Assembly (NCBI RefSeq): GCF_011386835.1 | Contig: NC_088792.1 | Coordinates: forward strand, 240,126,001 to 240,190,000 | Source of the DNA: Chrysemys picta bellii | Taxonomy: Eukaryota | Reading direction: 5' to 3' | Length of the DNA: 64,000 bases | In this document: positions 4,552 to 48,926 of the stretch, in pieces | Layout: each line of letters starts with the position of its first letter | How positions within the stretch are numbered: position 1 is the stretch's first letter | The notes under the pieces: model-generated | What the model was told of the DNA's origin: nothing | The model's input: only the letters and a program-made list of their open reading frames with translations | The model's database searches: none | Made by a program: the position numbers and the translations under genes

Positions 4552-4715
4552 GTTGTTTTTCTATTTTTCTAGTGTGGTTTCTTCAAACTCTTGCCAGTTT
4601 GAAGGACAGATTGTCCAGACTGAGAACATCTTTGAAACACTATTCTCCTCAGTGAGCCAATCCTTGCTGATGTTCACAGTGGGTCTCTCCAGGCAATCCA
4701 GTTTTCCTGTACCAC
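4552..4715 (-). pseudogene. Decayed FABP exon 2 remnant
   Basis: Aligns by eye to gene B exon 2 (plus strand GTGTGGTTTCTTCAAACTCTTG-CCAGTTTGAAGGA and CTGATGTTCACAGTGGGTCTCTCCAGGCAATCCAGTTT). Frameshifts present, donor lost. Confidence 0.75.
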
Positions 4716-5739
4716 CTTGTTGGAAAGGAATGCTTCACAGACAGAGGCATTCTCTAGCCCAATTTATACAGCGCTCATTGAAGTCAATATGAGTCTTTTT
4801 GTCTTCAGTGGGTTTTGGGTCAGACCCATAATGAGAAGCCAAAGTATAATTGACTATAAACCCTTCCCTTCTTGAGGTGTGAAATCTTTAATGGGGATCA
4901 GACAAGGCCCTATCCCTCACTTGACAGCCCTAATGAGAGTGTAGTTCAGCAAGCAGGCTTTAAAACTTGGTGAGAATTTCCCACGGGTATTAATTTATCT
5001 GCATTTAAGAAACGAACATGGTTTATTGTAACAAACTACTCACAACAAAAGGTATGTAAGAGGGGAAAATGTATGTCCACTTTTGTAAAGTCTAGAAGCG
5101 TCTCTGGAGCATCTGTATGTCAGTAATATTACAAGTACAGAAACGAGGCTTTTGAAATAATTGTTTGATTAAAAACATAACAGTCGGAAAAGAAAGCCAG
5201 AAAATGAAGATTTGAAACAGACACTACCAGAAGCTTTGCATAGGCCCATTAGTGCTGCTTTCTCTCTCTCTCTCAAACACACACCAAGTTTGGGTGAGTC
5301 AGGAGCAAAGGAATTGATTTCATTAGAAAACATTTTAAACTTTGTAAATCGGATGGGATGGTAGAAACTGGATCCACTGTTACATCTGGCATATGCCTTC
5401 TGACAGCACAAACAATGAACTGGAGGTTGGGTAAGTGATGTAGCCAATTTATCACAGCAGCATTATCTAGAGACATCAAGCACATTCATCTACCATCAAG
5501 ATGATAAAGAGGGGAGTCCATCATCAGATGGTATGCTATTTGTTCTTGAGCTCCACGGGGGCAGGATGGGGAGCTCAAGTAGATTAACAGTAAAGATATA
5601 AGTTAAACTGCCCATGACTCCAACATATCCTGTTGTAACGAAGAAGGATCTTTTGGCTCATATGGTTGTCTGGGGGGCATGCAAGAGCATATCCAGAGAC
5701 ACTAGAGGCTGCAGATATGAGTTGTCTATCTGTCAAGAA

Positions 5740-6170
5740 ATGCTACATCAATGCAAAACATAGCCCTGAGCCTCCTGTTGCTGCCATTCCTTAGAAAGTT
5801 TGTGTCCGAGGTACTGTCTGGGAAGCTCAATGGTTTCAAAAAAGTGGTCACATTATCTGGCATTTTGGATGTGGCTTTGAGATGAAATTGTGATGTAAGC
5901 TGTCTTGGTGGTTGACTGTGCACAACAATGCAGCCCTGGATCTGCCCTCACACCTAATTGCTGGGGCAGCAAGGGGAGCTGGGAGTGGAAGGGTGGAGAT
6001 GTGAGTTGTCTGGGTTGCACCAGATGATACGAAGGCCATAGTTGATACTTGAGTCCAGCTTGCCACAATAATGACTGGAGATCCAAGCTGCTGCACAGTA
6101 TTCCATGGATACAATCATTATGGGACTGGTAGATGTCCGTCAGGTTGCAGCACTGCCGCCGTAGGAGTTG
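5740..6170 (-). mobile_element. Old Vingi/Ingi-like (I-clade) LINE fragment
   Basis: Minus-strand frameshifted translation SMEYCAAAW...KLDSSINYGLRII..ATQTTHISTLPLPAPLAAPAIR resembles the post-RT EYCAPVW...LRIITG...LP.LA.I.PP.IRR region. Confidence 0.5.
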
Positions 6171-6696: not shown

Positions 6697-6769
6697 ACGC
6701 CTGAGCTATTCCTGGGAACTTGGAAACTCGTTTCCAGTGAAAACTTTGAGGAATACATGAAAGAACTGG
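6697..6769 (+). pseudogene. Orphan FABP exon 1 with ATG>ACG start
   Basis: ACG CCT GAG CTA TTC CTG GGA ACT TGG ... GAA CTG G|GTGAG = (M>T)[24 protein letters not shown]. Exactly 73 nt with an intact donor. No plus-strand exon 2 found before gene B. Confidence 0.85.
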
Positions 6770-10014: not shown

Positions 10015-10065
10015 TCATGCTTTCTCATAGACTCTAGTGCAGATGGCATACTTCATGGTACATTC
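10015..10065 (-). CDS. FABP paralog B exon 4
   Basis: 51 nt, [16 protein letters not shown]. Confidence 0.93.
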   Translation of the reverse strand, partial: ECTMKYAICTRVYEKA

Positions 10066-24128: not shown

Positions 24129-24201
24129 ATGTGTGAGTTATTTTTAGGAACCTGGAAACTCATTTCTAGTGAAAACTTTGACAGCTATATGAAAGAACTG
24201 G
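24129..24201 (+). CDS. FABP paralog D coding exon 1
   Basis: 73 nt, donor GTAAGG. Confidence 0.93.
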
Positions 24202-27200
24202 GTAAGGAGTATACTATAATTCAAGTAGGAAATCTCTCTCCTAATAGATGATTCTGAGAATGTATTTAATTCCATTTATTTACTCAACTTAGTTTTCTAC
24301 TCATGGTTGCTTCACTTTAGATTGCTGATGCTTATTTGGGATAATAGAACATAGTTCCTGGCTTTTCTTTATATTTTACAAATATTTCTTTCTAGCTAAT
24401 GATTCAGATGATGATGATGATGTTCTCTCCCTTTTCCTAATAAGGGGAAGATACTGTTTGAATCTGCCTGGGGCTGTTATCTACTGATAATGCTTTCTTG
24501 ACTATCAGTCCTTTGAATGAGTTGCTTGTGGAACCCGTGGGTTAATGCTCACTAATACGCAATAAAAGTTATGAGGGCCCTAATGTAACTATGTGAATGA
24601 CTGATACCCAGGTATGACAGGTTTTTTTACCACATAGATTTCCCCTCTTTCTGTATTTCTGCTAATCTCCGTGATCTCCTTGGTACTTCAGTTAGAGCCC
24701 ATTCAGGTGTTCGTGAGAGAGCGTCTAGTACATCCACAGACCTCTTCAGCAAGTTGCAGTGAGCTATGTCTCCCTTCTGGACATGCATGTAAAATCCAAG
24801 CTGTTAACTTGTGCTTTTCTTTTCAAGGGGTGGGTTTTACGACTAGGAAACTTGGCAGCCTGGCCAAGCCCAGTGTGATCATCAGCATCAATGATGACGT
24901 AATAACCATCAAGACAGAGAGCACCTTTAAAAACACAGAGATCTCCTTCAAGCTGGGGGAAGAGTTTGAGGAAACCACAGCAGATGACAGGAAAACCACG
25001 GTGAGGGCTAATCCTTCAGGATGTCCTGCAAAGGACACCTGGGTTTGTGCCCTTTCTTGCCTCATGATTATTTTTGTCTTGATATGGCTTTCTTCCTTTT
25101 CCCCAATCTCCATAAGTATGGGGGAATCCCATGGCTGACCCTAGGGCAATCATGTGCCCACTGTGAACCCACAAACTAAATCCCACCCATCTTCTAAGGC
25201 ATTTCAACATCTAAGTCTCTTTGAGGATCCAGGTCTAACGTCTAGGCAACCAGAAAACTCAGGCTTTGTGAATCCCAGGAATTAAGTACCTAGGCTCCCT
25301 ATATAATGAGAGCAGAGACCAGCACCTCAGAATGGGATCCACAGAAACTGGCATGCTAGGCAGTGAACGGCCTAAGCTAGCCAATGGGAAACGATGATGA
25401 GAGGGGTGTGTTGTAAGGTCCCTCCCTCTCACAGAATTGGGTGCCTATGTCTGGGTCAGGGAGGTGCTTATCACCTGCTTGCAGCCCACAGCTGGAACCC
25501 CTCTCCCAAAGTTGATGGCTTAGGTGCCCAAGCTGCCCTATTGCCAGAATGGTTTGGGGAGGAGGAAGTGGCAGTGGTGGCAGCAGCCTTCCTTAGCCCA
25601 GGAGTTAGGGATGTGGGAGACTTCAGTTTAAATTCCCCACACACACCTGGCCTGAGAAGAAGGGCTTTGTACAGGCATCTCCCACCACTCAGGTGAGTGC
25701 CCCAAGTACTTGGCCAAATGAGACTCACTCTGTTGTCCCAATTAATATTTATTTGAAGTAGAATAGCTGCAACAGGAGAGACTGAGTGTCCTGTCAGAAT
25801 ATCCCAGAGTCCATTTGCTTCTCTTCTCTTGACAGAGCACTGTAACCTTGGACAATGGCTCTCTGACTCAGGTGCAGAAGTGGGATGGGAAACAGACCAC
25901 AATAAAGAGAGCGCTGGTGGATGGGAAGATGGTTATGGTTAGTTCAATTCTTTTTTTTTTTTTCTTTAACCCCCTCATCTGAGCATTAAATTCTTTTGAA
26001 CTAGAAAAGCACAGACTAAATGCTGCTGTGACTTATGATGGGGAACATGAGGAATGTAAAAAATACAATGTAGGGAAGTTTCACTTGAAATAAAACTGGT
26101 GGAGAGACCACAAATCAAGCTCTGTATCGGGGTGCTGGAACAACTTGTATAGTGCAGGTGCTGAGACCCATTGAACCAAACTGTAACCCCATATATAATT
26201 GAAGCCACTTAAAGCCAGGGGATGCAGCAGCACCCCTACTTCCAGCACCTATGGACTGTGTCATTGTATTAGCTGCTAAGTTAGGGGCTGGCAAACTTTT
26301 TGGCCTGAGGGCTGCATTGGGTTTCTGAAATTGTACAGAGGGCCAGTTAGGGGAGGGTGTGCCTCCCCCAAACAGTCAGGCCAGGCGTGGCCTGGCCCTT
26401 GCCCCCATCCAACCGCTCCTGCTTCTCACCCCCTGATGGCCTCCTGGGACTCCTGTCCCATCCAACCCTCCCTTCCCCCCCCCCCCCCCATTCCCTGTCC
26501 CCTGAGAGCCCCCAGAATCCCTGCCTCTGACTGCCCCCGTCACCCCCATCCAACCCCTGGTCTCATTCCTGACTGCCCCCCTCAGAACTCCTGCCCCATT
26601 CAACCCCCCTCTCCTCCCTGCCTGCCCCCATTCAACCCCCCCCCCCGTTCCCTGCCCTCTGACCACCACCCCAAACTCCCCTGCCCTCTATCCTCCTCCC
26701 GCTCCCTGCCCCCTTACCACGCTGCCTGGAGTACCGGTGGCTGGCAGCGCAACAGCCACGCTGCCTGGCTGGAGCCAGCTATGCCACAGCGCACAGCACC
26801 AGGTCAGGCCCCGGCACTGCAGCTGCGCTGCCCCAGGAGCTTGCAGCCCAGAGCATTGTGCTGGCGGCAGAGCAAGCAAGCTGAGGCTGCAGGGGAGGAG
26901 CACAGCAGGGGAGGGGCTGGGGGCTAGCCTCCTGTGACAGGAGCTCAGGGGCCAGGCAGGAGGGTCCCGCAGGTCCCGTAGTTTGCCCACCTCTGTGCTA
27001 AGTGATGAACAGAAAGGTAGGGGAAGATAGGAGCCCTGCCAATCAAGTGCACTAGGCAGAGAAGTAGAGTATATTTAGTGAGCAGCTAGCACTAAAGAAT
27101 TCCTGGAGGCAAGAAATGTCTGGTTTCTTTTTCTGATGACATGAATATCATAGTGATGGGCACTAAATAAACACCTTTGACTCTGAGAAATGACCAACAT

Positions 27201-27329
27201 CCTTGCCCTACTTAGACTCATAAAATTCTGGTGTGATGTTTCAGAAGTTTCAATCCATTTTATTTTCTCCCGCCCTAGGAATGCACCATGAATAATGTCA
27301 CCTGCACTAGAGTCTACGAGAGGGCCTGA
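24129..27329 (+). CDS. FABP paralog D (tandem duplicate of C), 132 aa; join(24129..24201,24828..25000,25836..25937,27279..27329)
   Basis: [132 protein letters not shown]. 20 aa differences from C by manual count, AATAAA 27501-27506. Confidence 0.95.
24828..25000 (+). CDS. FABP paralog D exon 2
   Basis: 173 nt, AG/GTGAGG flanks. Confidence 0.93.
25836..25937 (+). CDS. FABP paralog D exon 3
   Basis: 102 nt, GACAG acceptor, GTTAGT donor. Confidence 0.92.
26282..26995. mobile_element. hAT MITE in D intron 3
   Basis: TAGGGGCTGGCAAAC...GTTTGCCCACCTCTG, perfect TSD TGCTAAGT. Confidence 0.85.
27279..27329 (+). CDS. FABP paralog D exon 4
   Basis: 51 nt, [16 protein letters not shown]. Confidence 0.93.
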   Translation, partial: ECTMNNVTCTRVYERA

Positions 27330-32301: not shown

Positions 32302-32374
32302 ATGTGTGACCTGTTTGTGGGAATCTGGAAGTTTGTCTCCAGTGAAAAATTTGAGGACTATATGAAAGAACTGG
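32302..32374 (+). CDS. FABP paralog E coding exon 1
   Basis: 73 nt, donor GTGAGA. Confidence 0.93.
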
Positions 32375-34753
32375 GTGAGAAAAATGATACTGTGATATTT
32401 GGGGATGTCCCATTGTTCAGCAAGGGAAGTGTAACTAGCCACATACTCTGTTTTGGGATTTCTTTCATTGTTCTTAGGGACTCTTGCTCATGTAGTTCCC
32501 TAGTACTCAATAAGGAAAAAAATGAGGCTGTATCAAAGTTTAAATTCCTTTTAAAAAAAGAAATGTTGCTTCAGTTAACTAGAAATACCTACGGTGTCTT
32601 CCTAGATTTTTATAAGATTCTGACCTTGCATCTTCTTAGGCAGGGGATTAGGATTGAAAGGGAAGAAGCTGCTGCTATAACACTGTAGGTGTAATTTGCT
32701 TGTTCAGTAGTATGTGTAGAGAAAGTCTTATTTAATATTGGATGACCACTTTCTGTCTTGATAATGGGGACATAAAAGGGCAGGCTCTGGCTCCTAGCAT
32801 CTACCACTATAAAGCAATGGAAGCTAAAAAACTGAAGGCTAAATCTTGTTTTGATCTATGCTGGTGTACATCCGGAAGGAGTCAATGGCATTGTCTCCAA
32901 TTCTCTGTTGTAAGAGACCAAAATGTGGATGTTGGTATCAGAGACCGCAATATCACCAATAACTTATTATTCCGGGCACCAGAGTGTAGTGCTTAGGGGA
33001 AGCAGTAGATGGGTAACAGCTGAGCTATAGTTTACCCTCTTTTAGGGTTCCAATCTAAAACCTGCATAGCTTTGGGGTTCACTGATTGGGTTAAAGACTT
33101 CTACCCTGTGATTACTGCTTTGCTGAGAGAACTGTAGCAGCAGAATGTACCTTTAAACTGAAAATGCAAAGCTCATAAAGCTGACCTCCCTACACCAGCT
33201 CTTTCTAGATTCCATGTGGGACAGAGTTTGTCCGCTGCTGATGGAACAATGCGGTGTGTGTGTGTCTTTTTACAGGCCTGTCAGCTGTATAAATAAGAGG
33301 TCTAAGTAGCCTGGTTGTCAGGTGGCTAGAAACATTCAGATCAGATGAGGCATTGAGCCTGAACTCCCAACGTGTTTGGAATGTCCCACACAGAGAGGAT
33401 AGACACTTTAAAGAAATGTCTTGGTTCCTGATGGTGAACGTAAGTGTCTTGTGCCTCTGCAGGTGTGGGTTTAGCCACCAGGACACTGGGCAGCCTGGCC
33501 AAACCCACCGTGACCATCAGCAGGGATGGTGATGTGATAACCATCGAAACAAAGAGTACTTTCAAAAGTACTGAGGTCTCCTTCAAGTTGGGGGAGGAGT
33601 TTGAGGAAACCACAGCAGATGACAGGAAAACCAAGGTGAGTACTAAAGCAGCATTCATTCTTCATTCCCATTACTCCATTGAGGAGAAACAAACTGAAGG
33701 GAGAAAGTTCCCTATTTAAACAAAGGGTTCAGGGAATGTGAAACTTGGTTCTGGGTTAAATATCATTAAAATCTCTTAAACTCATTTTTAACCATCAGTG
33801 CCTGCTGTTGGACAACAAGAATGGGAGCAGTCAACTTTGCTAGCATATGTTCTTGCATTAACATAAACACAAATAACTGAGTTGGAAACATCTGGGGGAT
33901 TTCTCTAGTTCTAAACTTCAGACTGTTCTCCCCCACCCCTCAACTCTCAGATTCTGGTCAATTACTCTCTTTGCAGAGCATTGTCACCTTGGAAGAAGGC
34001 TCACTAACTCAGGTGCAGAAGTGGGATGGTAAAGAGACCACAATAAAGAGAAAACTAGCAGATGGGAAGATGATTGTGGTGAGTGAAATCACTTGACTAC
34101 TGGCTAGTGGTATTAACTATATCTTAATGGGATTGCATCAGGGCTGACTCAAGCAAACCCAGGGCTTTCTAAAAAGCCACTTAATTGCATTCCTTCTGAC
34201 TGCCTAGACTATGATTTAGTGTGGAACTATTCCCCACCTGCCTCAAATCTCTATACCAGCTTGGGGTGGGAAGCAAAGCTCAGTCCCATGTGTGGAAGAA
34301 TTAGCTGGTGAATGGGTGGCAGCACTGTCCAAACTGCTGCTGTAACCAGAAAAACCCTGTTTGAATTGCATAGTCAAAATGCACCTATGCTCCAATGGAA
34401 GTGGGGTAAGATAAACAAAATGGAAGCAAATGAGAACTACCTAAACATGACACACTCTTGGGATGGTCAAGGCTGAGATGAAGTGATGAGCTCCATTGTC
34501 TTATTGCAATAATGGACAAACTGTCCTTCCCTCTTCTGCTTAAATTGAAGAAAAAGGCAAAGAACCCTAATATGTATCTAGGGAATTACTAAAATACTAT
34601 TACTATAGTTCTGAGGGGGCAGAAAAGATTGGCTCTTATTTCAACAGCAGTCTGAATCTCACTGATAGTTCATGAGTTTCAATAAACTCCTTTTTCTTAC
34701 AGGAATACACCATGAACAATATCACTTGCACTAGAGTCTATGAGAGAGCATGA
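32302..34753 (+). CDS. FABP paralog E (FABP4/FABP12-like), 132 aa; join(32302..32374,33463..33635,33977..34078,34703..34753)
   Basis: [136 protein letters not shown] introns, TATAAA 32199-32204, AATAAA 34925-34930. Confidence 0.95.
33463..33635 (+). CDS. FABP paralog E exon 2
   Basis: 173 nt, TGCAG acceptor, GTGAGT donor. Confidence 0.93.
33977..34078 (+). CDS. FABP paralog E exon 3
   Basis: 102 nt, TTGCAG acceptor, GTGAGT donor. Confidence 0.93.
34703..34753 (+). CDS. FABP paralog E exon 4
   Basis: 51 nt, [16 protein letters not shown]. Confidence 0.93.
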   Translation, partial: EYTMNNITCTRVYERA

Positions 34754-37264: not shown

Positions 37265-39750
37265 AAAATGACTACTTAAAATTGGAAGTCAAATCCTGGG
37301 AGGGAGATTTCCACACTTGAACCATTCTTTTTAGGTGACAAATCTGAGGAATTGCCCCAGATTGAGATGTTGGCAGAGGAGCTTTTGGAACAGATTGATA
37401 CATTAATCAATAAGAAGTCACCAGGACCAGATAGCAATCACACAAGAGTTCTACGGAACTCAAATATAGGGTGACCACATGTCCAGGTTTCCCCAGACAT
37501 GACCTCAGTTTTGATCCTCTGGATGGATTTTGCAAATAAGATGCAATGGCTGGGATTTTTGTGAGCCAATGTTGCAGCTCAGAAAGAGCTGTCTTCATGC
37601 CCCAATTGGCCCCTTCCCTCCAGCTGCCAGACCTTGCCCCAGCTCCCAGCTGTGGGGAGGGGGCCTGCAGGGAGGCGGTGGCTGATGCTGCATCTGGAGC
37701 CTGCACCAGCCACCGTGCTGCTGTCACAGGGAGTGACACTGGCCCCCACCTTGAGAGTGAGGCTGCAGGTACCCCCTCCAACAGCTTCCAGGTGTCTCTC
37801 CCAGTACACACACACACCCTACCAGGACCCTCCAAAACTCTATCCTAGTACAAACACACTCCTCCAGTACCCCCACAGAACTCCCTGAATACCCCTCCCA
37901 GTTCACATGCACCTCTAGCATCCCCAAATACCCCCTCCCAGTATACTCACCCCTCCAGCACCCCTCAAATACTTCCTCACAGTACACACACACACACACA
38001 CCCTTCCACCACTCCCCAAATGCTCCTTCCCCGCCTCCCCTTCTCTGGCAGTGTCTCTTTTTGGGAACCTGAAATATGGTAACCCTACTCAGGTCAGGCT
38101 ATGCCTGCTACGGTAATGACAGTAGACATTACTACCGGGGGCTCACCAAACCCACTGCCTTCTGGGTAGCCCAGGAGGGTGTAAGGCTAAGGGAGCAAAC
38201 TATTACAGAAAAGCCCCACTGCCTTGTGGGTGAATTCAGGAGAATGTAAGGCTATGAGAGTAAACTCAGACAGAAAATCTGGAGTGGAGCACCGAAGGCG
38301 GTCAGGTACTAATATTTTAGTATCTTTCTAGCAACTCTTGCAGCGGATCAGGTACCAGACATATTGGTTTTTCCTCTCCTCTGGATTTTACTGGTGATGC
38401 CGAGAGGGGGGGTCCTGGTTCATGGGCAACTCAGGGCCTCCATATCATCTGCCCTGCCTTGCGCCCTGGAGAGGTACTCCAGCTTTGCCTTGAGTGTCGA
38501 CACAACACGGGAGGCAGCAGTCACCAGTTCTACAAACTCAAATATGAAACTGCGGAACTACTAGCCGTGGTATATAACCTATCACTTAAATCAGCTTCTG
38601 TACCAGATGACTGGCAGATAGCTAATGTAATGCAGATTTTTAAAAAAGGCTCCAGAGGTGATCCTGACAATTACAGGCCAGTAAGCCTAACTTCAGTAGT
38701 GGGTAAATTGCTTGAAACTATAGCAAAGAAAAGAGTTATCAGAGCCACAAGTGAACACCATACAAAATTACTCAAGATAGTTAAGTCCAAAGCTGTCTGC
38801 AAAGAGTTACAAAGGGATCTCACAAAACTGGGTGACTGGGCAACAAAATTGCTGATGAAATTCAGTGTTGATAAATGCAAAGTAATGCACATTAGAAAAC
38901 ATAATCCCAACTATACATACAAAATGAGCTCTAAATTAGCTGTTACTGCTCAAGAAAGAGATCTTGCAGTCATTGTAAATAGTTCTTTAAAAACATACGC
39001 TCAATGTGCAGCAGCAGTCAAAAAAGGTAATAGAATGTTAGGAACCATTAGAAGAGGTGGAGATAAGACAGAAAATATCACAATGACAGTACATATATCC
39101 ATGGTACGCCCACATCTTGAATACTGTATGCAGTTCTGGTATCCCCATCTTAAAAAAGACATTAGAAATGGAAAAAGTGCAGAGAAAGGCAAAAAAAATA
39201 TTAGGGGTATGGAACAGGTTCCATAGGAGGAGAAATTAAAAAGAGTGTGACTGTTCAGCTTAGAAAAGAGATGACTAAGAGGGGGTTCTGACAGAGGTCT
39301 ATAAAATCAGGAATCGTGTGGAGAAAGGTAATAAGGAAATGTTATTTACCCCTTCACATAACATAAGAACCAGAGATCACCCATTGAAATTAATAGGCAG
39401 GAGATTTAAAACAAACATAAGGAAGTACTTCTTCACACAATGTTCAGTCAACATGTGGAACTCGCTGCCAGGGGATGTTATGAAGGCCAAAAGTATAGCT
39501 GGGTTCAAAAAAGAATTAGATAAGTTCATCTATTAGCCAAGATGGTCAGGGATGTAACCACATACTCTGGGTGTCCCTAAACCGCCGACTGCCAGAAACT
39601 GGGACTGAATGACAGGGGATGGATCACTGGATAAATTGCCCTGTTCTGTTCATTTCACCTGAAGCATCTGGCCCCGGCCTCTGTCGGAAGACAGGCTATT
39701 GGGCTAGATGGACTATTGGTCTGACCCAGTATGGCCGTTCTTATGTTGTT
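37265..39750 (+). mobile_element. CR1 LINE fragment interrupted by nested insertions (37468-38525)
   Basis: KSPGPD.IH.RVL.ELKY continues after the insert as ELKYETAELL...NYRPVSLTS. RT core deleted. 3' end CCCAGTATGGCCGTTCTTATG. Confidence 0.88.
37467..38087. mobile_element. hAT/Tip100-like non-autonomous DNA transposon
   Basis: Termini TAGGGTGACC...GGTAACCCTA. Confidence 0.6.
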
Positions 39751-40144: not shown

Positions 40145-40195
40145 TCAGGCTTTCTCATAGATCCTAGTGCAGGTGATGTCATTCATGGTGCATTC
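40145..40195 (-). CDS. FABP12: FABP12-like last exon (coding part)
   Basis: 51 nt, [16 protein letters not shown]. Confidence 0.93.
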   Translation of the reverse strand, partial: ECTMNDITCTRIYEKA

Positions 40196-43100
40196 CTAGA
40201 AGACAAAAGAGGAGTTCACCGAAACAGTTGTACTTTCTCACAGCAAAACTGTAAAGACAATCCCACTTTAAATACAAAGAGGGAGAAGAAAAATCCTCTC
40301 ACCCATTTTGTTTGTGCAAAGAAAAATGTGCACTGAAGTATATTATAAGGCTATTGGTATTAGTATTTCCCCTTTTCACATTTTCTTCCAACTTACAAAA
40401 AAATCAAAATATATGTTAAAGCAGGGATCAACAACCTTTGGCATGCAGCCTACCAAGGTAAGCCCCCTGGCGGGCCGGGCCGGTTTGTTTACCTGCCGCG
40501 TCCGCAGGCTCGGCCGATCGCGGCTCCCACTGGCCGCGGATCACCGCTCCAGGCCAATGGGGGCGGCGGGAAGCGACAGCCAGCACATCCCTCGGCCTGC
40601 ACCACTTCCAGCAGCCCCCATTAGCCAGGGACGGTGAACCACGGCCAGTGGGAGCCGCGATCAGCTGAACCTGCGGATGCGGCAGGTAAACAAACCGGCC
40701 CGGCCCGCCAGGGTGCTTGCCAAAGGTTGCCAATTCCTGTGTTAAAGACTAATATTAATATGAATTCAGCCATCTTTTGAGCTTCTTCATTTCTGTCTTA
40801 CTTATATGGCCCCCATAACCACAGTATCTGAACACCTCACAATCTTAAATGAATTTATCCTCACAACACCCCTCTAAGATATGGAAATACTTTTATCCCA
40901 CTTTACAGTTGAGGGAACTGAAGCACAGAGAGTCTAAGGCCCACATGCTTAAAAGTATTTAGGTTCCTAAATCTCATTGAAATCAACAGGAGTTGGGTAC
41001 CTAAATACCTTTGAGGGTCTGGGTCTAAGTCTAAGTAACTTGCCCAAAGTTATAGAGGAAATGTGTGGTGGAGTAGGGACTTGAACACATGTCTTCTGGG
41101 TTCTATGCTAACCACCAGGCCATCTTTCCTCTTCTCCCATATTCTATAATATTAACTTGATTCAACCTATTTTCTAATGTTCTCTTCCTGCCCTATGCAA
41201 CCAATCACATTTCTAATATAAGCCACATTTATTTAAAGAGAAAATGGAATGTATAATAAAACTATAACTGTTTAGATGATCTCTACATCTTTGCATTACT
41301 CAGTGATCAGATAACTAGAATGAATTCACTCACCACCACCATTTTCCCATCTACCACTTGTCTCTTTATTGTGGTCTCTTTGCCATCCCAATTCTGGACC
41401 TGATTTAATGACCCATTTTCTAAGGTCACAATGCTCTGAAGAAACAAAACATAAAGAAGCAAAACATGAGTATCCTGCCCAGATTATTATTATTTATAGA
41501 GCAGAGGCACACACAATACCCCAGTTATGCTAGTTTCTGTACAAACATATATTAAAAGATAGCCCGGGTCCAGAAGAGCTGATTGTCATGCTGGTTAAAG
41601 AAGTGATTCACTCAACACTCAGAAAGTCCCACTTTCTATCTTGGGGTTTTACACTGAACATAAGAACGGCCACACTGGGTCAGACCAGAGGTCCATCTAG
41701 CTGAGTATCCTGTCTTCCGATAGTGGCCGGGGCCAGGTGCTTCAGAGGGAATGAACAGAATAGATAATCATCAAGTGATCCATCCCCTATCGCCCATCCC
41801 TGCAGCTCATCATGTTGGGTATCTGGGGATCTTTCATGTAAAATAGATGGGCAATGCTAGGTACTAGCCCCAATGCTATTCAACATTTTTATTCATGTTT
41901 TGGCAATACGTATAAAATCACTACTGATAACATTTATGGATGAAACAGATTGCCAGAGTAGTAATTAATGAGGGCAGAGCAATCTGGATTGGTTAGTCAA
42001 CTGGGCCCATTTAAAACAAAATTTAAAACTACACCCAGTATTCCAGTATTGGTCTGACCAATGCCCTATACAGAGGTGAAATCACCTTCCGACTCATACT
42101 CACTATTTCTCTGTTAATTCTCTGCTGTCACAATCCTAGTCATTCCCCCTTCTGGACACTCACCAGTCTGCTGCGTTTGGGTCTCAACATGGTGGTGCCA
42201 TGTGCTTTAAGCTTCCTGTGGCTCTGGGTTTTTAGGCACACTCCCCCTTAGTAGTCTCTTTTCTAAGCTGAAAACTCCCAGTCTTATTAATCTCTCCTTA
42301 TACGGAAGCCATTCCACACCCCTATTCATTTTTGTTGCTCTTTTCTGAACTTCTCCAATTCCAATATATCTTTTTTGAGATGGGGTGACCACATCTGCAT
42401 GTAGTATTCAAGATGTGAGCGAACCATGGATTTATATAGCAGCAATATAATATTTTCTGTCTTATTATCTATCCCTTTCTTAACAATTCTCAATGTTCTG
42501 TTCGTTTTTTTGACTGCTGCTGCACATTGAGTGGATGTTTTCAGAGAACTATCCACCCTGACTCCAAGATCTCTCTCTTGCGTGGTAACAGCTAATATAG
42601 ACTTCGTCATTTTATATGTATAGTTGGGATTATATTTTCCACTGTGCATTACTTTGCATTTATCGACATTGAATTCTTTCTTCTAGAATAACCTATAAGT
42701 TATTGAGCTAGGTACAAAGTTACAGAGGTAACTGGGTTAGACTACATGATCTAATGATCCTTTCTGTCCTTAAACTCTATAAATCTAAGGAAAAAATTCC
42801 TAGTGTACTTCATGGAATCTGGCTCTTCTCCTTTTTTGGGGATATAAAAGCTCTACTTAAGTTGCTCTGAGCTTTCCAGGTGTGTTTATCTAATTATCCA
42901 CTCTGATAATTAGCAGATGTGCTATTACCATGTGGAAAAGAACTGTCCGTGCCTGTTGCAGCAGATTGGGAGAACTGTGAAGAACAGCTTTAATCCTCAC
43001 CTTGGTTTTCCGGTCATCTGGTGTGGTTTCATCAAACTCCTCACCAAGCTTAAAAGAGATCTCATTATTTTTAAAGGCACTTTTGGTTTGGATGGTTACC

Positions 43101-46100
43101 ACATCGCCGTCAGCACTGATGGTCATGCTGGGTTTGGCCAGCGTGCCCAGTTTCCTGGTGGCTAAGCCGACTCCTGTAAGCAAGAGAATTCAGATCTCTT
43201 AAACTACCAGGAAAAAAAAAACATTATGGATTTCAGTGTCTCAGGAAGGAGAACAGTGGCACTGATGGGAATGGCAAACATCCTCAGATGCTTACATAGG
43301 TCTTTATATTTCAAGTCATTAGCAATTTCCTAGTGAGGACTGGGCTCAATTTATTGCTCACTGAAATCAATGGGCTTTAAATCAGGGCAAAAAAAACTTC
43401 CATGATCACAATGAAGAACTTTAATGCATATGTGATGGCTCAGGAGCAATTGGCACCTATGATCTCTCCCCATCTCCCCAGTGAGCACTCTTTCCAGTTC
43501 CACGCCTTTACCTGTACTTCTCTGCACTCTTTCTAGAGTGGAACTCTGAGGTTCACCCCCACCCGCACTTTAGACTGAATCTGCAGGCTACACCCCCTAT
43601 TCCTACCTTCTTCCCACAGTTACAGGACAAGTGGTGTCTTATACCTCCTTGCAATCCTTCATGAATGAACCCCTCAAGGGACAGGTTATGCTACCTACAC
43701 TTTCTCTGGGTGAAACCCCATGGTCCTACCACACTTTCACTGGATCCTAGGGCAGCAGCGCTCCTGGTTCCCAACTATGTTAACACAACAGGCTCAAGTG
43801 CAATTGGTACGCTCCTTCTCAGGTGCCTGACTAAAGAGACTCAAATCAGCTACTTCTAAACAGACGTATTGCCCATTCACCCAAAGGTACACAGCAAGCA
43901 GAGGTAAAGGTTAACCCCACAAAAGGCCCACATGCCTGAGGCTTGCCTGCAGCCCATCGCTTCTCTCAATGCTTAGGTGAGCTCAGCTATCTCAGGCACT
44001 TCCTGCAGAGCCCCTGCCTCTGGAAGTCCCCAGTCTGCTGCATGTTCTGCCTAACCAGATATGGGGACTTCACTACATGATGCTTGGTGTAATGCCATCA
44101 ACTATGGTCACTAGCAGAACGGTCCTCAGTAGACTATGCGTGATTGATGATGTTGTTCCTTTAATCTTAGTCTCTGGTCTTGGAAAAATAGGATGTCACT
44201 CTTCTGGCAGGAGTGATGGAAGTGCCCTAAAAGTGGGGAGGCCACCAGCGGCCGAACTGTGGCCCTGCTCCCCCATACCTCCCAAACCCCCAGCCTCACA
44301 CTCTTCCTTCCCACCGGGGGGCCCGCCCTCATACTGCCCCTTCTCCCTGAGGCCCTGTCCTCATGCTTTCCCTTCCCCCTGAAGCCTAGCTCCCTGCTCA
44401 TTCCTATCTGCCCCCTCCCCTCCATCACTCACCCTTACGGCTGATAAAAAGTGAGGGGCCATGGCCCTCTAGCCCCTCCTGTTCTGGCATCCCTGCCTTC
44501 TGGCAACTGGCAGGCAAGAGTTTTCCAACAACTAGCTCAACCGTTGTTTCTCTTAAGGACCCCTGGTATTCTCCCTGGAGAGACCTTATCTCTGTCCTTG
44601 TTTTGTTTCCTGCTTGCATCCACCATCAGCCTTCTTTGATTTTATTCCCCTGGCTTAGAGGGGAAGTGAAATCACCTAAAAAAAACACTGGGAAAGTTCC
44701 AGAAGATTGAAAGAAAGCTAATGCTGTGCCAGTATTTAAAAAGGCTGAACAGGATGATCTGAGTAAACTGCCAGTCTGACATTGATCCTGGGTAAGATAA
44801 TGGAGGGGCTGATACAGGACTCAGTTAATGAAGACTTGAAGGAGGGTAATATAATTAATGTCAATCAACATGGGTTATAGAAAACAGAACCCATCAGACT
44901 GACTTAATATCTTTTTTATGAGATTACAAGTTTGGTTGATAAAGGTAATAGTGTTGACATAATATATTTAGACTTATGTAAAGCATTTGACTTGGTTTTG
45001 CACAACCTGTTGATTAAAAAGCCAGAATGATATAAAATTATCATGACACACATTAAATGGATTAAAAGCTGGCTAACTGTAATTGTAAACAGGGAATCAT
45101 CAGGTATGTTTCTAGTGGGGTCCTATAGAAACTGGTTCTTGGCCTTTCACTATTTAACATTTTTATCAACAGGCCCGCTGACAGCAATTCTGGGCCCCAG
45201 GGGTGCGGGGCCCGGGGCGAAAGTGACTTCCGGGACCGACCTGTCACTTCCAGGACTGACCGCGCTGGCCAATTGTGCTGGCCCGCAGGGCCCCAAAGGA
45301 GGAGTCACGCATGCCTAGGAGCCCTGAGGCCCGCCCAGGCGATTTAAAATCACCCAGGCCCCTGGGCAGTTGCCCCCCTCCCCCGCCCCGGTCGGCGGGC
45401 CTGTTTATTAATGACCTCAGAAAAAACATAGAATTTTCACTGATAAAGCTTGCAAATGACACAGAAATTAGGGGAGTGGTAAGGAATGAAGAGGACATGT
45501 CACTGATACAGAGCGATTTGGATCTCTTGGTAAATATGTGTTTTAATATGGCTGAATGTAAAGTTATACATCTAGGAGCAAAGAATGTAGGCCATACTTA
45601 CATGATAGAGAACTCAAGCCTGGGAAGCAGTGACTCTGAAAAAGATTTGTGAGTCATGGTGGATAATCAGCTGATCAGAAGCTCCCAGTGTGATGATGTG
45701 GCCAAAAGGGCTAATGCAATCTTTGGATGCATAAACCAGGACACCTCAAGTAGGAACAGAGAAATTATTTTACTTCTGAATTTGGTACTGGTGCAACTGC
45801 TGCTGGGATACTGTTTCTAGTTCTGGTGTCCACAGTTCAAGAAGGATGTTGATCAATTGGAGTGGGTTCAGAAAAGAGCCATGAGAATGATTAAAGGAGG
45901 GGTGGGGAACCTTTTTTCTACCAGGGGCCACTGGCCCACAGAAAAAATTAGTCACGGGACACACACAGTCCCGTGGGGGGAGAAAGGGGGGGAGGCTCGG
46001 GGCTTCCCCTAGGTTCTGGGGTGGGGCCAGAAATCAGGGTTTTGGGGTGCAGGAGGCTCAAGGCTGGGGCAGGGGTTTGGGTGCGGTAGAGGGTTCTGAC

Positions 46101-48926
46101 CTGGGCATGGGGCATTAGGGGTGTGGGCTCCGGCTGAGCGGTGCTTATCTCAGGCGGCTGCTGGTCGGCAGTGCAGCGGGGCTAAGGCAGGCTCCCTGCC
46201 TGCCCTGGCTCCATGCTGGTCCTGGAAGCAGCCGCCATGTCCGGCTCCTAGGTGGAAGGGCCAGGGGTCTCTGTGCGGTGCGCGCTGCCCGCGCCAGCAG
46301 CTCCCATTGGACACAGTTCCTCACCAATGGGAGTTGCAGAGCTGGTGCTGGGGGAAGTGCACAGAGCTTCCCTGATCGCCTCTGCTCCTAGGAGCCACAG
46401 GGACATGCCGGTTATTTCCGGGAGCTGGAGCCAACTCTAACTTTCCCCCACAGCGGGGCAAGCCGGCGCTTGCGGCTCCAGCCCAATGGGGGGGGGGCGC
46501 CAAGGCTCGGGGCCTCTGGCCGGCAATGCAGAAACTTGCCATGGGCCAGATTAAATGAAACAATGGGACGGCTCCAGCCCACAGGCCTGGATTAAAGGAT
46601 TAGAAAGCCTGCCTTCTAATGATAGACTCAAGGAGCTCAAACTATTTAGCTTAACAAACAGAAGGTTAAGGGGTGACTTGATTACAGTCTACCAGTACCC
46701 ACATGGGGAATAAATATTTGATAATGGGCTATTTGATTTAGCAGAGCAAAGTATAGCCTAGTCCAATGGCTGCAAATTGAAGCTAGCAAATTTAGACTGG
46801 AAATAAGGTGTACATTTTTAACAGTGAAAGTAATTAACCATTAGAGAAATTTACCAACGTGGATTCTCCATCGCTGAAAATTTTTAAATCCAGATTGGAT
46901 GTTCTTTGAGCAGGGGGTTGGACTAGATGACCTCTTGAGGTCCCTTCCAACTCTGATATTCTATGATTCTATGATTCTTCTAAAAGATTTGCCTAAGGAA
47001 TTATTTTCAGGATGTTCTTTCTATGTCCTGTGTTACATAGGAGCTCAGACTAGATGATCACAATGGTCCCTCCTGGCCTTAGAATCTATGGGTCTATGAA
47101 TCTGTGATTTAACTCTGAGTAATCAGCCAGAATAATACCCAGCAGGTAAACGCAGGCACATATATTCATACAAAATAATACAGACATCTTCCTCATTCCC
47201 CACACACTACTTTTAATACCTTCCTCATAAAGTTTACTACAAGGTGCCCAGAAAGAGTTTTAAATAGACATGGGTACCTTGCACTTCAGAATGCACTTTA
47301 TGAGGCAAAATTAAAAGTATGGCTTAGACAGTCTCCTTTGTGTGACCTGATCATGGTAAGGGCTCATTTATTCATTGCTTGCAGTCTTACCTATGTTGGA
47401 TAAAGCTCTACCAGTGACTGACCAATGAATGGAAAGCCAAACACAAACGAGGCTTTGTGTTTTGGGGGAATCATTATTAGTTAAGCCCTTTGTTCCCACA
47501 AAGGACAGAGACAAACCGATCCCTTCAGAGTTTATGCCTCAAAAAGCCTGTATTTGAGAAAGATTGCAGCACCAAAACAAGCTGAAACAATTTATTAGGG
47601 GAGATCTGGTGAGCTTTTGAGACATTCCTAGAAAAAACATAAAGGGCAATCAGGGGGGGAGCGTATAGGTTTGTTCAAATCTGGGTTACATTGTGCCTAA
47701 ATCACCACATTTTGGGAGAGGGCTTGGCTTATAATTGCAAGTCCTTTAATAAAGTTTTATGTAGAGCAAACAGCCATGTCTCAGAATGGTGTCAGCAGCC
47801 TTGGAGGCAGACTGTAGAAACAAGACAGCAATTGTCAATTGGTACTAGGGAATCAGTGATGTCACTGTCATCAGGGATGGCTCCAGGCACCAGCACAGGA
47901 AGCAGGTGCTTGGGGCGGCCAATGGAAAGGGGTGGCACGTCTGGGTGTTCAGCTGGGAATTCGGCAGTGGGTCTCTCAGTCCCTCTTGGAGGGAAGGACC
48001 GGCCGCCGAATTGCCGCCGAAGAATGAAGCAGCACAGTAGAGCAGCTGCCGAAGTGTCGTCGATCGCGTCTTTTTTTTTTCCCCTCTTCGCCGCTTGGGG
48101 CAGCAAAAAAGCTGGAACAGGCCCTGACTGTCATGATACTGTCATATTTGAGGTATGAGAAGTGTTTGGTAGTACTATTAAGGAGAACCCAATATTAGGT
48201 TATTGCAAAAATGATGCTCATTTTAATTGATTGGCTCTATTTGGCAACTGAACATGTACCATCACTTTTCCTCTTATTTGCAGTGGCTTCTTCCAACTCT
48301 TGGCTTAGTTGAAGGAGGTCTTGGTATTTTAACAGGATTTGGGGTTTTGATGGTACTATCATGTCCACATTTTACAAGTATAGCAATTTTCCAGGACAAA
48401 AGCAAAAATGTAGCCATTGAAACAAAATCAATGCAGAAACCCCACATCTTTATATGTTATCTCAAGAAAGGATTCAGGGAGTGGGAATCATCTTTAACAC
48501 AACCACCTCTGGCTAGAATATGCACAAATGAATTACTAATTAAATTACTTTATACATATCATAGGCTTTTTTCAAGTGTAACAGATTATCTGGGCAATTC
48601 CCAGGCAATGGAGGATCAGTACCTGCAGTGTCATTTCGAGTCCACTATAGTGGTGAAAGTCTTAATCAAAAAGGAGTGTCACCACTTCCCATAGCCTCCT
48701 CTACTGTCTCATAGTGGTCGCCCTTTTGTGCTTGCAAGTGACAAGAAAGCAACAGATCCCCAGATTATTTCTATTTAAAACAGTGTATATTAAAGAGAGA
48801 AAGGGCACTTAAAATTAAAAGAAAATGCATTCAAACCCTGTAATATTTCTTACCTAATTCTTTCATGTATGCATCAAAGTTTTCACATGAGGTTGATTTC
48901 CAGGTTCCCAGGAGATGATCAACCAT
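40145..48926 (-). CDS. FABP12: FABP12-like fatty acid-binding protein (paralog F), 132 aa; complement(join(48854..48926,43001..43173,41334..41435,40145..40195))
   Basis: [135 protein letters not shown]-x-SCEN, TKS-x-FKNNEISF and E-x-TP match recalled mammalian FABP12 diagnostics. AATAAA 40071-40076(-). The gene model is firm; the symbol is less certain (about 0.65). Confidence 0.9.
40422..40739. mobile_element. hAT MITE in F intron 3
   Basis: CAGGGATCAACAACC...GGTTGCCAATTCCTG, perfect TSD TGTTAAAG. Confidence 0.87.
40800..41125 (-). mobile_element. CORE-SINE (MIR-like) in F intron 3
   Basis: TTATCCCACTTTACAGTTGAGGGAACTGAAGCACAGAGAG..AAGTAACTTGCCCAA. Confidence 0.65.
41334..41435 (-). CDS. 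FABP12: FABP12-like exon 3 (coding)
   Basis: 102 nt, TTCTTCAG acceptor, GTGAGT donor. Confidence 0.93.
41659..41800 (-). mobile_element. CR1 3' end fragment in F intron 2
   Basis: Reverse complement of the CR1 3' UTR (ACATAAGAACGGCC...GGTCCATCTAG). Confidence 0.75.
42245..42680 (-). mobile_element. CR1 ORF2 fragment in F intron 2
   Basis: ORF 42326-42649: [13 protein letters not shown]...[24 protein letters not shown]. Confidence 0.88.
43001..43173 (-). CDS. FABP12: FABP12-like exon 2 (coding)
   Basis: 173 nt, TTACAG acceptor, GTGAGG donor. Confidence 0.93.
44208..44495. mobile_element. hAT-like MITE
   Basis: CAGGAG...CCCTG termini, TSD TCTTCTGG/CCTTCTGG. Confidence 0.65.
45170..45403. 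mobile_element. hAT MITE
   Basis: TIR CAGGCCCGCTGAC / GTCGGCGGGCCTG, 8-bp TSD TTTATCAA/TTTATTAA. Confidence 0.8.
45897..46589. mobile_element. hAT-like MITE
   Basis: GC-rich insert starting AGGGGTGGGGAACC, flanked by the duplicated GATTAAAGGA of the host CR1. Confidence 0.7.
47872..48126. mobile_element. hAT MITE in F intron 1
   Basis: CAGGG...CCCTG termini, perfect TSD ACTGTCAT. Confidence 0.85.
48854..48926 (-). CDS. FABP12: FABP12-like first coding exon
   Basis: 73 nt coding, donor GTAAGA. Confidence 0.9.

What the first reader, a model, noticed from the sequence alone, without database searches (positions are those of the whole stretch)
4552..48926. Expanded cluster of five intact FABP paralogs plus two remnants; none is a clear FABP4, PMP2 or FABP9 ortholog
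Seen: five open 132-aa four-exon FABP genes and two decayed pieces within 45 kb. Established: the mammalian locus has single PMP2, FABP9, FABP4 and FABP12 genes. Genes B-E combine an FABP4-type start and end (MC..F, RVYERA) with the PMP2/FABP12-type helix-II motif R[KT]LG[ST]LAKP, not the FABP4 motif RK[VM]AG[MV]AKP. Inference: a turtle or reptile-specific birth-and-death radiation of lipid chaperones, possibly specialised by tissue or ligand.
Basis: partly seen in the sequence, partly recalled or inferred. Interest (0 to 1): 0.78.

Follow-up and report, generated by a model that had tools for sequence, protein, structure and literature searches.

The report
Painted-turtle expanded fatty-acid-binding-protein gene cluster
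This stretch of the painted turtle genome holds five intact, already annotated fatty-acid-binding-protein genes: one is the turtle FABP12, and the other four are old reptile or turtle duplicates that crocodiles and birds have mostly lost. It is a solid gene-family expansion, not a new kind of system.

Summary
The window is Chrysemys picta bellii CM062319.1:240,126,001-240,190,000. It carries five intact four-exon, 132-aa FABP genes, which I label A-E by position.

- No gene is an FABP4, PMP2 or FABP9 ortholog.
- Gene E is a robust FABP12 ortholog (clade support 100/99).
- The true FABP4 and a sixth extra paralog (F) lie just upstream of the window. PMP2 lies beyond FABP4 in Chelonia.
- All the extra genes sit between FABP12 and FABP4.

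This is not a recent turtle burst.
- B, C and D were already separate genes before side-necked and hidden-necked turtles split.
- D and F group with FABP12 and a tuatara gene.
- Crocodile and emu keep decayed relics at matching positions.
- Whether the extras are reptile-specific or older and lost in mammals is unresolved (AU p=0.27).
- A's affinity is also unresolved.

All five genes keep the Arg-Arg-Tyr fatty-acid-binding triad. dN/dS was measured for C and D orthologs and for paralog pairs and is 0.08-0.36.

All five are already called in the NCBI annotation, and E is named FABP12 in UniRef. No expression data could be obtained.

The parts
10015..12810 (-). Gene A: intact 132-aa FABP paralog of unresolved affinity (MCDQF...RVYEKA; portal residue F57 replaced by V)
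   Evidence: Exons 12738-12810, 10830-11002, 10460-10561, 10015-10065, all GT-AG. Called as a 132-aa PF00061 gene in the NCBI annotation (L010 5597-8392). Forms a clade with Lepidochelys XP_073185478.1 at 100/100. An A-type exon 1 is present in Emydura next to psiB.
14419..19270 (+). Gene B: intact 132-aa FABP paralog, head-to-head with A
   Evidence: Exons 14419-14491, 15252-15424, 18146-18247, 19220-19270. Identical to P0225 = XP_065441875.1. The listed members of its 90% cluster come from cryptodire turtles. Non-coding homology with C extends into the 5' flank, introns and 3' flank. Emydura has a pseudogene copy that is colinear over 3.9 kb.
24129..27329 (+). Gene C: intact 132-aa FABP paralog, tandem partner of B
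   Evidence: Exons 24129-24201, 24828-25000, 25836-25937, 27279-27329. Identical to P0007 = XP_065441876.1. The C-type clade includes Emydura, Pelodiscus and Carettochelys. dN/dS is 0.36 against Emydura and 0.34 against Chelonia.
32302..34753 (+). Gene D: intact 132-aa FABP paralog of the D/F/FABP12 lineage (K31T, C117Y)
   Evidence: Exons 32302-32374, 33463-33635, 33977-34078, 34703-34753. Called as a 132-aa gene (L003 18174-20625). The turtle D clade has 100/93 support, is sister to F, and together they are next to FABP12. dN/dS is 0.30 against Chelonia. It is a pseudogene in Emydura.
40145..48926 (-). Gene E: FABP12 ortholog with a 5.7-kb intron 1
   Evidence: Exons 48854-48926, 43001-43173, 41334-41435, 40145-40195. 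Identical to P0232 = XP_005301567.1, UniRef name 'Fatty acid binding protein 12'. The FABP12 clade has 100/99 support. It is 90.9% identical to alligator FABP12 and 80.3% to a marsupial-type FABP12.
6697..6769 (+). Lone exon-1 relic of B/C type, start codon lost (ACG)
   Evidence: 82% nucleotide identity to exon 1 of A-D, and 87% protein identity to the Pelodiscus C-type gene. The GT donor is kept and no downstream exons follow.
4539..4702 (-). Decayed exon-2 relic
   Evidence: blastn gives 73-86% identity to the 3' half of exon 2 of A-E, E about 1e-6. It has frameshifts and stops and has lost its donor.
48266..48354 (-). Decayed exon-2 relic inside intron 1 of E, about 500 bp downstream of E exon 1
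   Evidence: blastn gives 75-76% identity to exon 2 of A, B and C (E down to 3e-11). The local alignment covers exon-2 positions 64-168 with indels. Crocodile FABP12 has its real exon 2 577 bp after exon 1.

Best explanation
The window is the FABP12-side part of the painted turtle's FABP4/PMP2/FABP12 tandem cluster of intracellular lipid-binding proteins.

Cluster map. Written with FABP12 on the + strand, the order is: FABP12 (E, +), D (-), C (-), B (-), A (+), relics, about 11 kb not sampled, F (-), FABP4 (+), an old pseudogene (-), PMP2 (+). The PMP2 position is shown in Chelonia and inferred for Chrysemys.

Orthology. E is the FABP12 ortholog. A, B, C, D and F (F lies outside the window) are extra paralogs lodged between FABP12 and FABP4.

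Origin and timing. The extras arose by local tandem and inverted duplication.
- D and F share a lineage with FABP12 and a tuatara gene.
- F-type and probably D- and A-type copies existed in the common ancestor of turtles and archosaurs.
- B and C separated before crown turtles diverged.

Turnover. Turtles kept the copies, while crocodiles and birds let them decay. Individual turtle lineages keep losing copies: psiB and psiD in Emydura, and a truncated C in hard-shelled sea turtles.

Function. Each intact gene should encode a standard 10-strand beta-barrel fatty-acid chaperone that holds the ligand carboxylate with Arg106, Arg126 and Tyr128. The paralogs differ mainly in helix II, at portal and cavity positions, and in their flanking DNA. 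Retention is therefore most likely through division of tissue expression and ligand or partner preference.

Shown: gene structures, orthology of E, age of B, C and D, relics, and sequence constraint.

Inferred: lipid binding, expression, and specialisation.
For: Gene models:
- Intact models with canonical splice sites.
- Exon sizes of 173 and 102 nt match the family norm (PMC7193176).

Identity of the window and annotation:
- The window matches the public record at 100%.
- B, C and E are identical to RefSeq proteins; A and D are called as 132-aa PF00061 genes.

Phylogeny:
- ML trees put E in the FABP12 clade at 100/99 and the D clade at 100/93.
- [tuatara, (F, D), FABP12] has 91/88 support.
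- A, B and C-type are separate turtle clades.
- FABP9 sits with mammalian FABP4 at 95/86.

Synteny:
- Chrysemys FABP4 and F lie upstream of the window.
- Chelonia has C, D, E and then FABP4, a pseudogene and PMP2.
- Emydura has A, psiB, C, psiD, with 3.6-4.0 kb of non-coding colinearity to the matching Chrysemys genes.
- Crocodylus has FABP4, a degenerate F-type gene, relics and FABP12.
- Emu has psiF, FABP4 and PMP2.

Divergence and constraint:
- dS for B-C is 0.27, against 0.21 for Chrysemys-Emydura C orthologs. Other paralog pairs have dS of 0.5-1.5.
- dN/dS is 0.30-0.36 for the C and D ortholog pairs measured, and 0.08-0.28 between paralogs.
- Only B and C share non-coding homology.

Functional residues and closest structures:
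- R106, R126, Y128, F16, Y19, D76 and R78 are kept in all five genes.
- The closest solved structures are PMP2 and FABP4 at 190-217 bits.
Against: - No expression or binding data were obtained. The runs that hold parts of the A/B region are only guessed to be RNA.
- With 132 columns the backbone of the tree is a polytomy.
- Alternative placements are not rejected: extras as one clade p=0.268, and A with FABP9 p=0.243.
- Ortholog dN/dS of about 0.3 rests on 13-37 substitutions per comparison and is only moderate constraint.
- About 11 kb between FABP4/F and the window was not sampled.
- PMP2 was located in Chelonia, not in Chrysemys itself.
- Crocodile and emu relics are too decayed to type. 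Their assignment to D, A or F rests on position and orientation.
- About 6 kb of the crocodile interval, between loci L005 and L004, was not sampled.
Confidence: 0.8

Rival explanations
1. Timing rival 1: A, B, C, D and F are all descendants of one sauropsid-specific duplicate of the FABP12 lineage. That would make it a reptile radiation that began after the split from mammals. It is the reader's 'reptile-specific' reading.
For: - The AU test does not reject all the extras plus the tuatara protein as one clade excluding FABP12 (p=0.268).
- All the extras lie in one block next to FABP12.
- They share the RKLG[ST]L[AT]KP helix-II motif with FABP12 and PMP2.
- No mammalian member appeared among the listed hits of two searches.
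Against: - The best ML trees place D/F nearer to FABP12 than to A, B or C, and leave A, B and C in the backbone polytomy.
- Paralog dS values are 0.5-1.5, which is 3-7 times the crown-turtle value.
- Exon 1 of B and C is closest to FABP4, and exon 1 of A and D is closest to PMP2.
Confidence: 0.4
2. Timing rival 2: the extra lineages date to the amniote ancestor or earlier and were lost in mammals. On this reading turtles are a living archive of the ancestral cluster.
For: - The ML topology ((D,F),FABP12), with mammalian FABP12 inside, implies that the D/F split predates the mammal-sauropsid split.
- dS between paralogs is large.
Against: - Support on the deciding branches is 88-97 UFBoot but only 67-80 SH-aLRT.
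- Eutherian FABP12 sits on a long branch (0.22) that may distort placement.
- No mammalian relics were looked for.
Confidence: 0.35
3. Gene A is the sauropsid ortholog of mammalian FABP9, the testis FABP.
For: - The AU test does not reject A+FABP9 (p=0.243).
- A shares 'GSMI' (Met91) and Asn77 with FABP9 sequences.
Against: - FABP9 groups with mammalian FABP4 at 95/86.
- An A-type protein scores higher to PMP2 (190 bits) than to FABP9 (173 bits).
- A lies between FABP12 and FABP4. It does not lie between FABP4 and PMP2, which is where FABP9 sits according to read-through models (FABP4-FABP9 in rabbit, FABP9-PMP2 in elephant seal) and to published synteny, which places all five genes on one chromosome (PMC7193176).
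- The other shared residues (Pro56, Asp99) are rabbit-specific.
Confidence: 0.12
4. The copies are assembly artefacts or unexpressed pseudogenes that happen to be open.
For: No transcript evidence was obtained here.
Against: - Paralogs differ by 10-24% at the nucleotide level.
- Parts of the same gene order recur in independent assemblies of Chelonia, Emydura and three emydids (Trachemys, Emys, Malaclemys).
- Five reading frames of 132 codons staying open since before the pleurodire-cryptodire split is not expected without selection. That split is more than 150 My old (general knowledge).
- dN/dS is below 0.4.
- Genuine pseudogene copies nearby show what decay looks like.
Confidence: 0.03

Closest known systems
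FABP12 (mammalian retina/testis FABP; named 'FABP12' in UniRef for Crocodylus, Pelodiscus and Chrysemys)
   Same: Gene E shares the N-terminal signature [17 protein letters not shown] with FABP12, along with [18 protein letters not shown] and [11 protein letters not shown]. It has the same four-exon structure and the same position at the FABP12 end of the cluster. It sits in the same clade at 100/99.
   Different: E is 132 aa, whereas many eutherian FABP12 proteins are 140 aa. Turtle intron 1 is 5.7 kb and holds a decayed exon-2 copy. A published survey states that FABP12 is found only in mammals (PMC7193176), which this ortholog contradicts.
PMP2 / FABP8 (myelin P2)
   Same: A-D share the helix-II motif RKLG.LAKP with PMP2. 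PMP2 is among the best-scoring solved structures for C (212 bits) and the best for an A-type protein (190 bits). NCBI names several of these genes 'myelin P2 protein-like'.
   Different: A-E fall outside the PMP2 clade (100/99). They lack PMP2's KGD.(I/V)TIRTES and ECxMKGVVCTR signatures. The true turtle PMP2 is a separate gene downstream of FABP4.
FABP4 (adipocyte FABP)
   Same: Same length and exon plan, and the same MC start and RVYE(R/K/T)A end. Exon 1 of B and C is 86-89% identical to turtle FABP4 exon 1. NCBI names B, C and D orthologs 'adipocyte-like'.
   Different: Helix II is RKLGSLAKP, not RKMAGVAKP. A-E fall outside the FABP4 clade. The true FABP4 (XP_005301572.1) lies about 21 kb upstream of the window.
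FABP9 (testis FABP)
   Same: A member of the same cluster, with 132 aa and four exons. It shares a few residues with gene A.
   Different: FABP9 groups with mammalian FABP4. No window gene joins it in the best trees, and the syntenic position differs.

Membership tests
Intracellular lipid-binding proteins / cytosolic FABPs (Pfam PF00061) | About 130-135 aa protein encoded by four exons, with conserved exon sizes (exon 2 = 173 nt, exon 3 = 102 nt) and intron phases | tested here: met
   All five genes have coding exons of 73/173/102/51 nt with GT-AG introns. The family norm is quoted from PMC7193176.
Intracellular lipid-binding proteins / cytosolic FABPs (Pfam PF00061) | Significant match to the family profile | tested here: met
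   PF00061 is recorded for the called products of A, B, C and D, for E and for P0007. C and an A-type protein score 190-217 bits to solved PMP2 and FABP4 structures.
Intracellular lipid-binding proteins / cytosolic FABPs (Pfam PF00061) | Carboxylate-binding triad Arg106, Arg126, Tyr128 (FABP4 numbering, taken from memory of the literature) | tested here: met
   R, R and Y are present at the aligned positions in A-E and F, with no gaps in the alignment.
Intracellular lipid-binding proteins / cytosolic FABPs (Pfam PF00061) | Binds long-chain fatty acids inside a beta-barrel | not testable with these tools
   Needs recombinant protein and binding assays. The fold is inferred from about 65-70% identity to solved structures.
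FABP12 orthogroup (gene E) | Monophyly with mammalian FABP12 in a gene tree | tested here: met
   100/99 support in two careful ML trees that include marsupial, eutherian, crocodilian and turtle members.
FABP12 orthogroup (gene E) | Position at the end of the cluster, on the far side of FABP4 from PMP2 | tested here: met
   Chrysemys, Chelonia and Crocodylus maps. The mammalian order is taken from read-through models, PMC7193176 and general knowledge. The neighbour beyond E (IMPA1 in mammals) was not found within 10 kb.
FABP4 orthogroup (A-E) | Helix-II motif RK[VM]AG[MV]AKP and membership of the FABP4 clade | tested here: not met
   The motif is absent from A-E. A-E lie outside the FABP4 clade (96/86). 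A separate true FABP4 exists.
PMP2 orthogroup (A-E) | Membership of the PMP2 clade | tested here: not met
   The PMP2 clade (100/99) excludes A-E. The true PMP2 was found in Chelonia.
FABP9 orthogroup (gene A) | Monophyly with mammalian FABP9 | tested here: inconclusive
   Not recovered in the best trees, but not rejected by the AU test (p=0.243). Only two FABP9 sequences were available, one of them partial. The rabbit one was verified at 232 bits to PDB FABP9.
FABP9 orthogroup (gene A) | Location between FABP4 and PMP2 | tested here: not met
   A lies between FABP12 and FABP4. The FABP4-PMP2 interval of Chrysemys and Chelonia holds only an inverted pseudogene relic.

The most novel reading that the evidence does not exclude
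Turtles may preserve three or four FABP lineages (A, B/C, D, F) that were present in the ancestral amniote or sauropsid cluster and were lost or decayed elsewhere. If so, the vertebrate FABP nomenclature lacks several members. These genes would then have distinct tissue or ligand roles, possibly tied to turtle lipid physiology. FABP12 would be an amniote-wide gene, not a mammalian invention.
Probability: 0.3. Interest if true: 0.5.

Novelty: new member of a known kind. Interest (0 to 1): 0.35.

Why it matters
The FABP4/5/8/9/12 cluster is a textbook example of tandem gene-family evolution, and its members are drug targets and metabolic markers. A published survey states that FABP9 and FABP12 exist only in mammals (PMC7193176).

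This locus shows that FABP12 predates the mammal-sauropsid split. It also shows that reptiles, and turtles above all, carry extra intact paralog lineages. Current annotation hides these under 'adipocyte-like' and 'myelin P2-like' names. That naming can mislead expression and orthology studies in turtles, where reads or proteins may be assigned to 'FABP4' or 'PMP2' wrongly.

The finding offers a natural series of closely related lipid chaperones with altered portal and helix-II residues for comparative binding studies. It is not a new mechanism.

Tried and rejected
They were included only in a local window-against-window blastn inside run_python and in locus L010, which was fetched by a protein look-up.
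- Sequencing runs. The look-up of sequencing runs gave only runs guessed to be RNA that hold 5-25% of the words. This is inconclusive.
- Failed look-up. The look-up of P0108 (A-type, Lepidochelys) found no record.
- Retracted note. I first noted the exon-1-like piece at L002 1151-1219 as PMP2 exon 1. It does not match turtle PMP2, so its status is unknown.
- Chimeric model. The first careful tree nested PMP2 inside FABP4 because of a chimeric database model (P0046 = FABP4 exons 1-2 plus PMP2 exons 3-4). I removed it and rebuilt the tree.
- Excluded sequence. The human PMP2 chain returned by the search (P0085) was left out of all trees.
- Mosaic idea. A mosaic or gene-conversion origin for the 'FABP4 start plus PMP2 helix' pattern remains open. 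Exon-wise identities show B/C exon 1 nearest FABP4 and A/D exon 1 nearest PMP2, but the exons are too short to decide. The MC start and RVYER end also occur in sauropsid PMP2, so shared ancestry suffices.
- Other ORFs. A Pfam scan of the ten longest non-FABP ORFs found only a weak reverse-transcriptase fragment. Nothing was recognised at 49-64 kb.
- Literature. Searches found no paper on turtle or reptile FABP cluster expansion.
- Earlier notes. The scan's earlier notes held nothing on this place.
- Full-length queries. Full-length spliced proteins could not be passed by reference. Searches started from exon-2-containing ORFs with the 'region' option, and then used the returned identical proteins.

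Full report
**What is in the window**

A six-frame motif scan and tblastn with a first gene model found FABP exons throughout 4.5-49 kb. Splice-aware modelling gives five genes. Each has coding exons of 73, 173, 102 and 51 nt, AG/GT at every boundary, an ATG and a stop, and each encodes 132 residues.

I label them by position: A (-, 10015-12810), B (+, 14419-19270), C (+, 24129-27329), D (+, 32302-34753) and E (-, 40145-48926). Protein identities are 70-77%, except B-C at 85%. Exon sizes of 173 and 102 nt are the norm for this family (PMC7193176).

- An exon-1 copy at 6697-6769 (+) has its start codon changed to ACG. It keeps an open frame and a GT donor, and no exons follow it.
- An exon-2 copy at 4539-4702 (-) has frameshifts and stops.
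- I also found a third relic, an exon-2 copy at 48266-48354 (-) inside intron 1 of E.

**Where the window comes from and what is annotated**

A search seeded from the ORF that contains exon 2 of C returned a 132-aa RefSeq protein of Chrysemys picta bellii identical to C. The DNA around that gene matches window 14129-37329 at 100%. The window is therefore CM062319.1:240,126,001-240,190,000 of assembly GCA_011386835.2.

Annotation of each gene:
- B equals XP_065441875.1.
- C equals XP_065441876.1.
- E equals XP_005301567.1, which NCBI calls 'myelin P2 protein-like' and UniRef calls 'Fatty acid binding protein 12'.
- A and D are called as 132-aa PF00061 genes in the same annotation.

The genes are therefore already in public databases, under '-like' names.

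**The rest of the cluster**

The true FABP4 (XP_005301572.1, helix-II motif RKMAGVAKP) lies at record 240,102,151-240,104,997, about 21 kb upstream of the window. Head-to-head with it is a sixth extra paralog, F (135 aa, XP_005301571.2). Beyond FABP4 lies an old pseudogene.

In Chelonia mydas the same pseudogene sits between FABP4 and PMP2, and PMP2 lies 10 kb downstream of FABP4. C, D and E lie 50-70 kb away on the other side, in the Chrysemys order.

With FABP12 written on the + strand, the turtle map is: FABP12/E (+), D (-), C (-), B (-), A (+), relics, about 11 kb not sampled, F (-), FABP4 (+), pseudogene (-), PMP2 (+). All the extras lie between FABP12 and FABP4.

An exon-1-like piece at the edge of locus L002 is of unknown status.

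**Phylogeny**

I ran careful ML trees (LG+C20+F+G4) on 79 and 86 proteins of 132 columns. A chimeric database model was removed from the second tree.

Well-supported clades are:
- FABP12 (100/99), which contains E with other turtles, crocodilians, marsupials and eutherians.
- PMP2 (100/99).
- FABP4 (96/86), with mammalian FABP9 attached to mammalian FABP4 (95/86).
- Turtle D (100/93).
- Turtle F (100/99).
- Turtle B (99/98).
- A with its Lepidochelys ortholog (100/100).
- A C-type clade that includes the pleurodire Emydura and the softshells (87/76).

D and F pair together and sit next to FABP12, with a tuatara protein just outside them (91/88). The backbone joining A, B, C-type, PMP2, FABP4 and that group is unresolved.

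AU tests do not reject A+FABP9 (p=0.243). They also do not reject all the extras forming one clade apart from FABP12 (p=0.268).

E is 90.9% identical to alligator FABP12 and 80.3% to a marsupial-type FABP12. It shares their N-terminal [17 protein letters not shown]. The rabbit sequence used as FABP9 was verified against solved FABP9 structures at 232 bits.

**Age of the duplicates**

Only B and C share non-coding homology, in the 5' flank, intron pieces and 3' flank at about 73-76%. All other pairs share exons only.

dS for B-C is 0.27, against 0.21 for the Chrysemys-Emydura C orthologs. Other paralog pairs have dS of 0.5-1.5.

Emydura carries, in the same order, an A-type exon 1, a B pseudogene, an intact C-type gene and a D pseudogene. 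Each region is colinear over 3.6-4.0 kb with its Chrysemys counterpart and far less with the others. B, C and D were therefore separate genes before crown turtles split.

Evidence from outside turtles:
- Crocodylus porosus has FABP4 head-to-head with a degenerate F-type gene. That gene has a 7-nt deletion in exon 1, a lost exon-2 donor and Arg126 replaced.
- Crocodylus also has an intact FABP12. An exon-2 relic lies tail-to-tail with it, which is the place and orientation of D, and an exon-1 relic with a stop lies further on in the orientation of A.
- Emu has an F-position relic upstream of FABP4, with PMP2 downstream.
- A gecko has FABP4 alone in 24 kb.

The expansion therefore began no later than the turtle-archosaur ancestor, and for D/F probably earlier, given the tuatara protein. 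Turtles retained what archosaurs lost. Losses continue within turtles. Hard-shelled sea turtles share a 2-nt deletion that truncates C to 128 aa and removes Tyr128.

**Function**

dN/dS is 0.30-0.36 for the C and D ortholog pairs measured and 0.08-0.28 between paralogs. Orthologs of A, B and E were not measured this way.

All five proteins keep Arg106, Arg126 and Tyr128, as well as Phe16, Tyr19, Asp76 and Arg78. The numbering follows FABP4 and is from my memory of the literature.

Differences at portal, cavity or helix positions:
- A: F57V, T29M, A75T
- D: K31T, C117Y, I62V
- E: A75P, T60N, V40M
- C: V115M

B and C differ most in exon 3, at 80% nucleotide identity against 94% in exon 2.

The closest solved structures are a 132-aa FABP (5bvq), PMP2 and FABP4, at 190-217 bits. 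FABP9 scores lower.

I infer ordinary cytosolic fatty-acid chaperones whose retention reflects divided expression or ligand preference. Nothing here tests that inference. The runs that hold parts of the region are only guessed to be RNA.

The claim that no gene is an FABP4, PMP2 or FABP9 ortholog stands, although A+FABP9 is not formally excluded.

Four points need revision:
- E is FABP12.
- FABP4 lies just outside the window, and PMP2 lies beyond FABP4 in Chelonia.
- The array is far older than a turtle-specific burst.
- The 'FABP4-type' start and end also occur in sauropsid PMP2, so they are probably ancestral states.

**Novelty**

No paper in the searched library treats this expansion. [quoted passage not shown]

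The genes themselves are already annotated. The finding amounts to new, unnamed lineages of a very well known family. It is of moderate interest for gene-family evolution and for correct orthology calls in reptile studies.

Noticed in passing
window 48266-48354 (-): A decayed exon-2 copy sits about 500 bp downstream of E's exon 1. In crocodile FABP12 the real exon 2 lies at nearly that distance (577 bp). The working turtle exon 2 is 5.7 kb away. This may mark a partial tandem duplication of FABP12 followed by exon swapping. The relic is slightly closer to exon 2 of A, B and C (73-77%) than to that of E (71%).
   Followed up: partly
window 12916-12968, 24004-24036, 32156-32210: A short conserved element about 100 bp upstream of the ATG is shared by A and D (83% over 53 nt) and by C and D (91% over 33 nt). 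It is a possible common promoter or 5'-UTR motif.
   Followed up: no
window 38459-39223 (+): A 255-codon ORF between D and E has a weak reverse-transcriptase match (RVT_1, E=1.4e-4, below Pfam's cut-off). It is probably a decayed retroelement.
   Followed up: partly
They lie in intron 1 of gene A. They were not sent to any search tool afterwards.
   Followed up: no
L002 1151-1219 (-), i.e. Chrysemys record about 240,113.8 kb, 12 kb upstream of the window: An exon-1-like piece ([23 protein letters not shown]) whose best match is the tuatara protein. It is either a lone relic or the first exon of a further gene in the unsampled 11 kb.
   Followed up: partly
L002 15976-16414 and L014 2004-2488: The same inverted pseudogene relic (exons 2-3 with stops) lies between FABP4 and PMP2 in Chrysemys and Chelonia. 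This is the interval where mammals have FABP9.
   Followed up: partly
L009 5032-5080 (Chelonia mydas gene C); proteins P0026-P0028, P0033, P0040: Hard-shelled sea turtles share a 2-nt deletion in exon 4 of C. It gives a 128-aa product without Tyr128. Dermochelys keeps the full length. Terrapene has a different 128-aa end.
   Followed up: partly
L006 (Emydura macquarii) 2717-5965 and 16606-18351: B and D are pseudogenes in this pleurodire (stops and a frameshift), while C-type and FABP12 are intact.
   Followed up: yes
L005 5864-7843 (Crocodylus porosus): The F-type gene annotated as a 147-aa product is degenerate. It has a 7-nt deletion after the start codon, the exon-2 donor GT is lost, and Arg126 is replaced.
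   Followed up: partly
database proteins P0001, P0002, P0003, P0004, P0005, P0046: Several public gene models are read-through chimeras of neighbouring cluster genes: C+D in sea turtles, FABP4+PMP2 in birds, FABP4+FABP9 in rabbit, and FABP9+PMP2 in elephant seal. One of them (P0046) distorted a tree until it was removed.
   Followed up: yes
window exon 3 of B (18146-18247) and of C (25836-25937): B and C are 94% identical in exon 2 but only 80% in exon 3, which is close to their non-coding identity. This suggests either gene conversion of exons 1-2 or relaxed or diversifying change in strands F-I.
   Followed up: no
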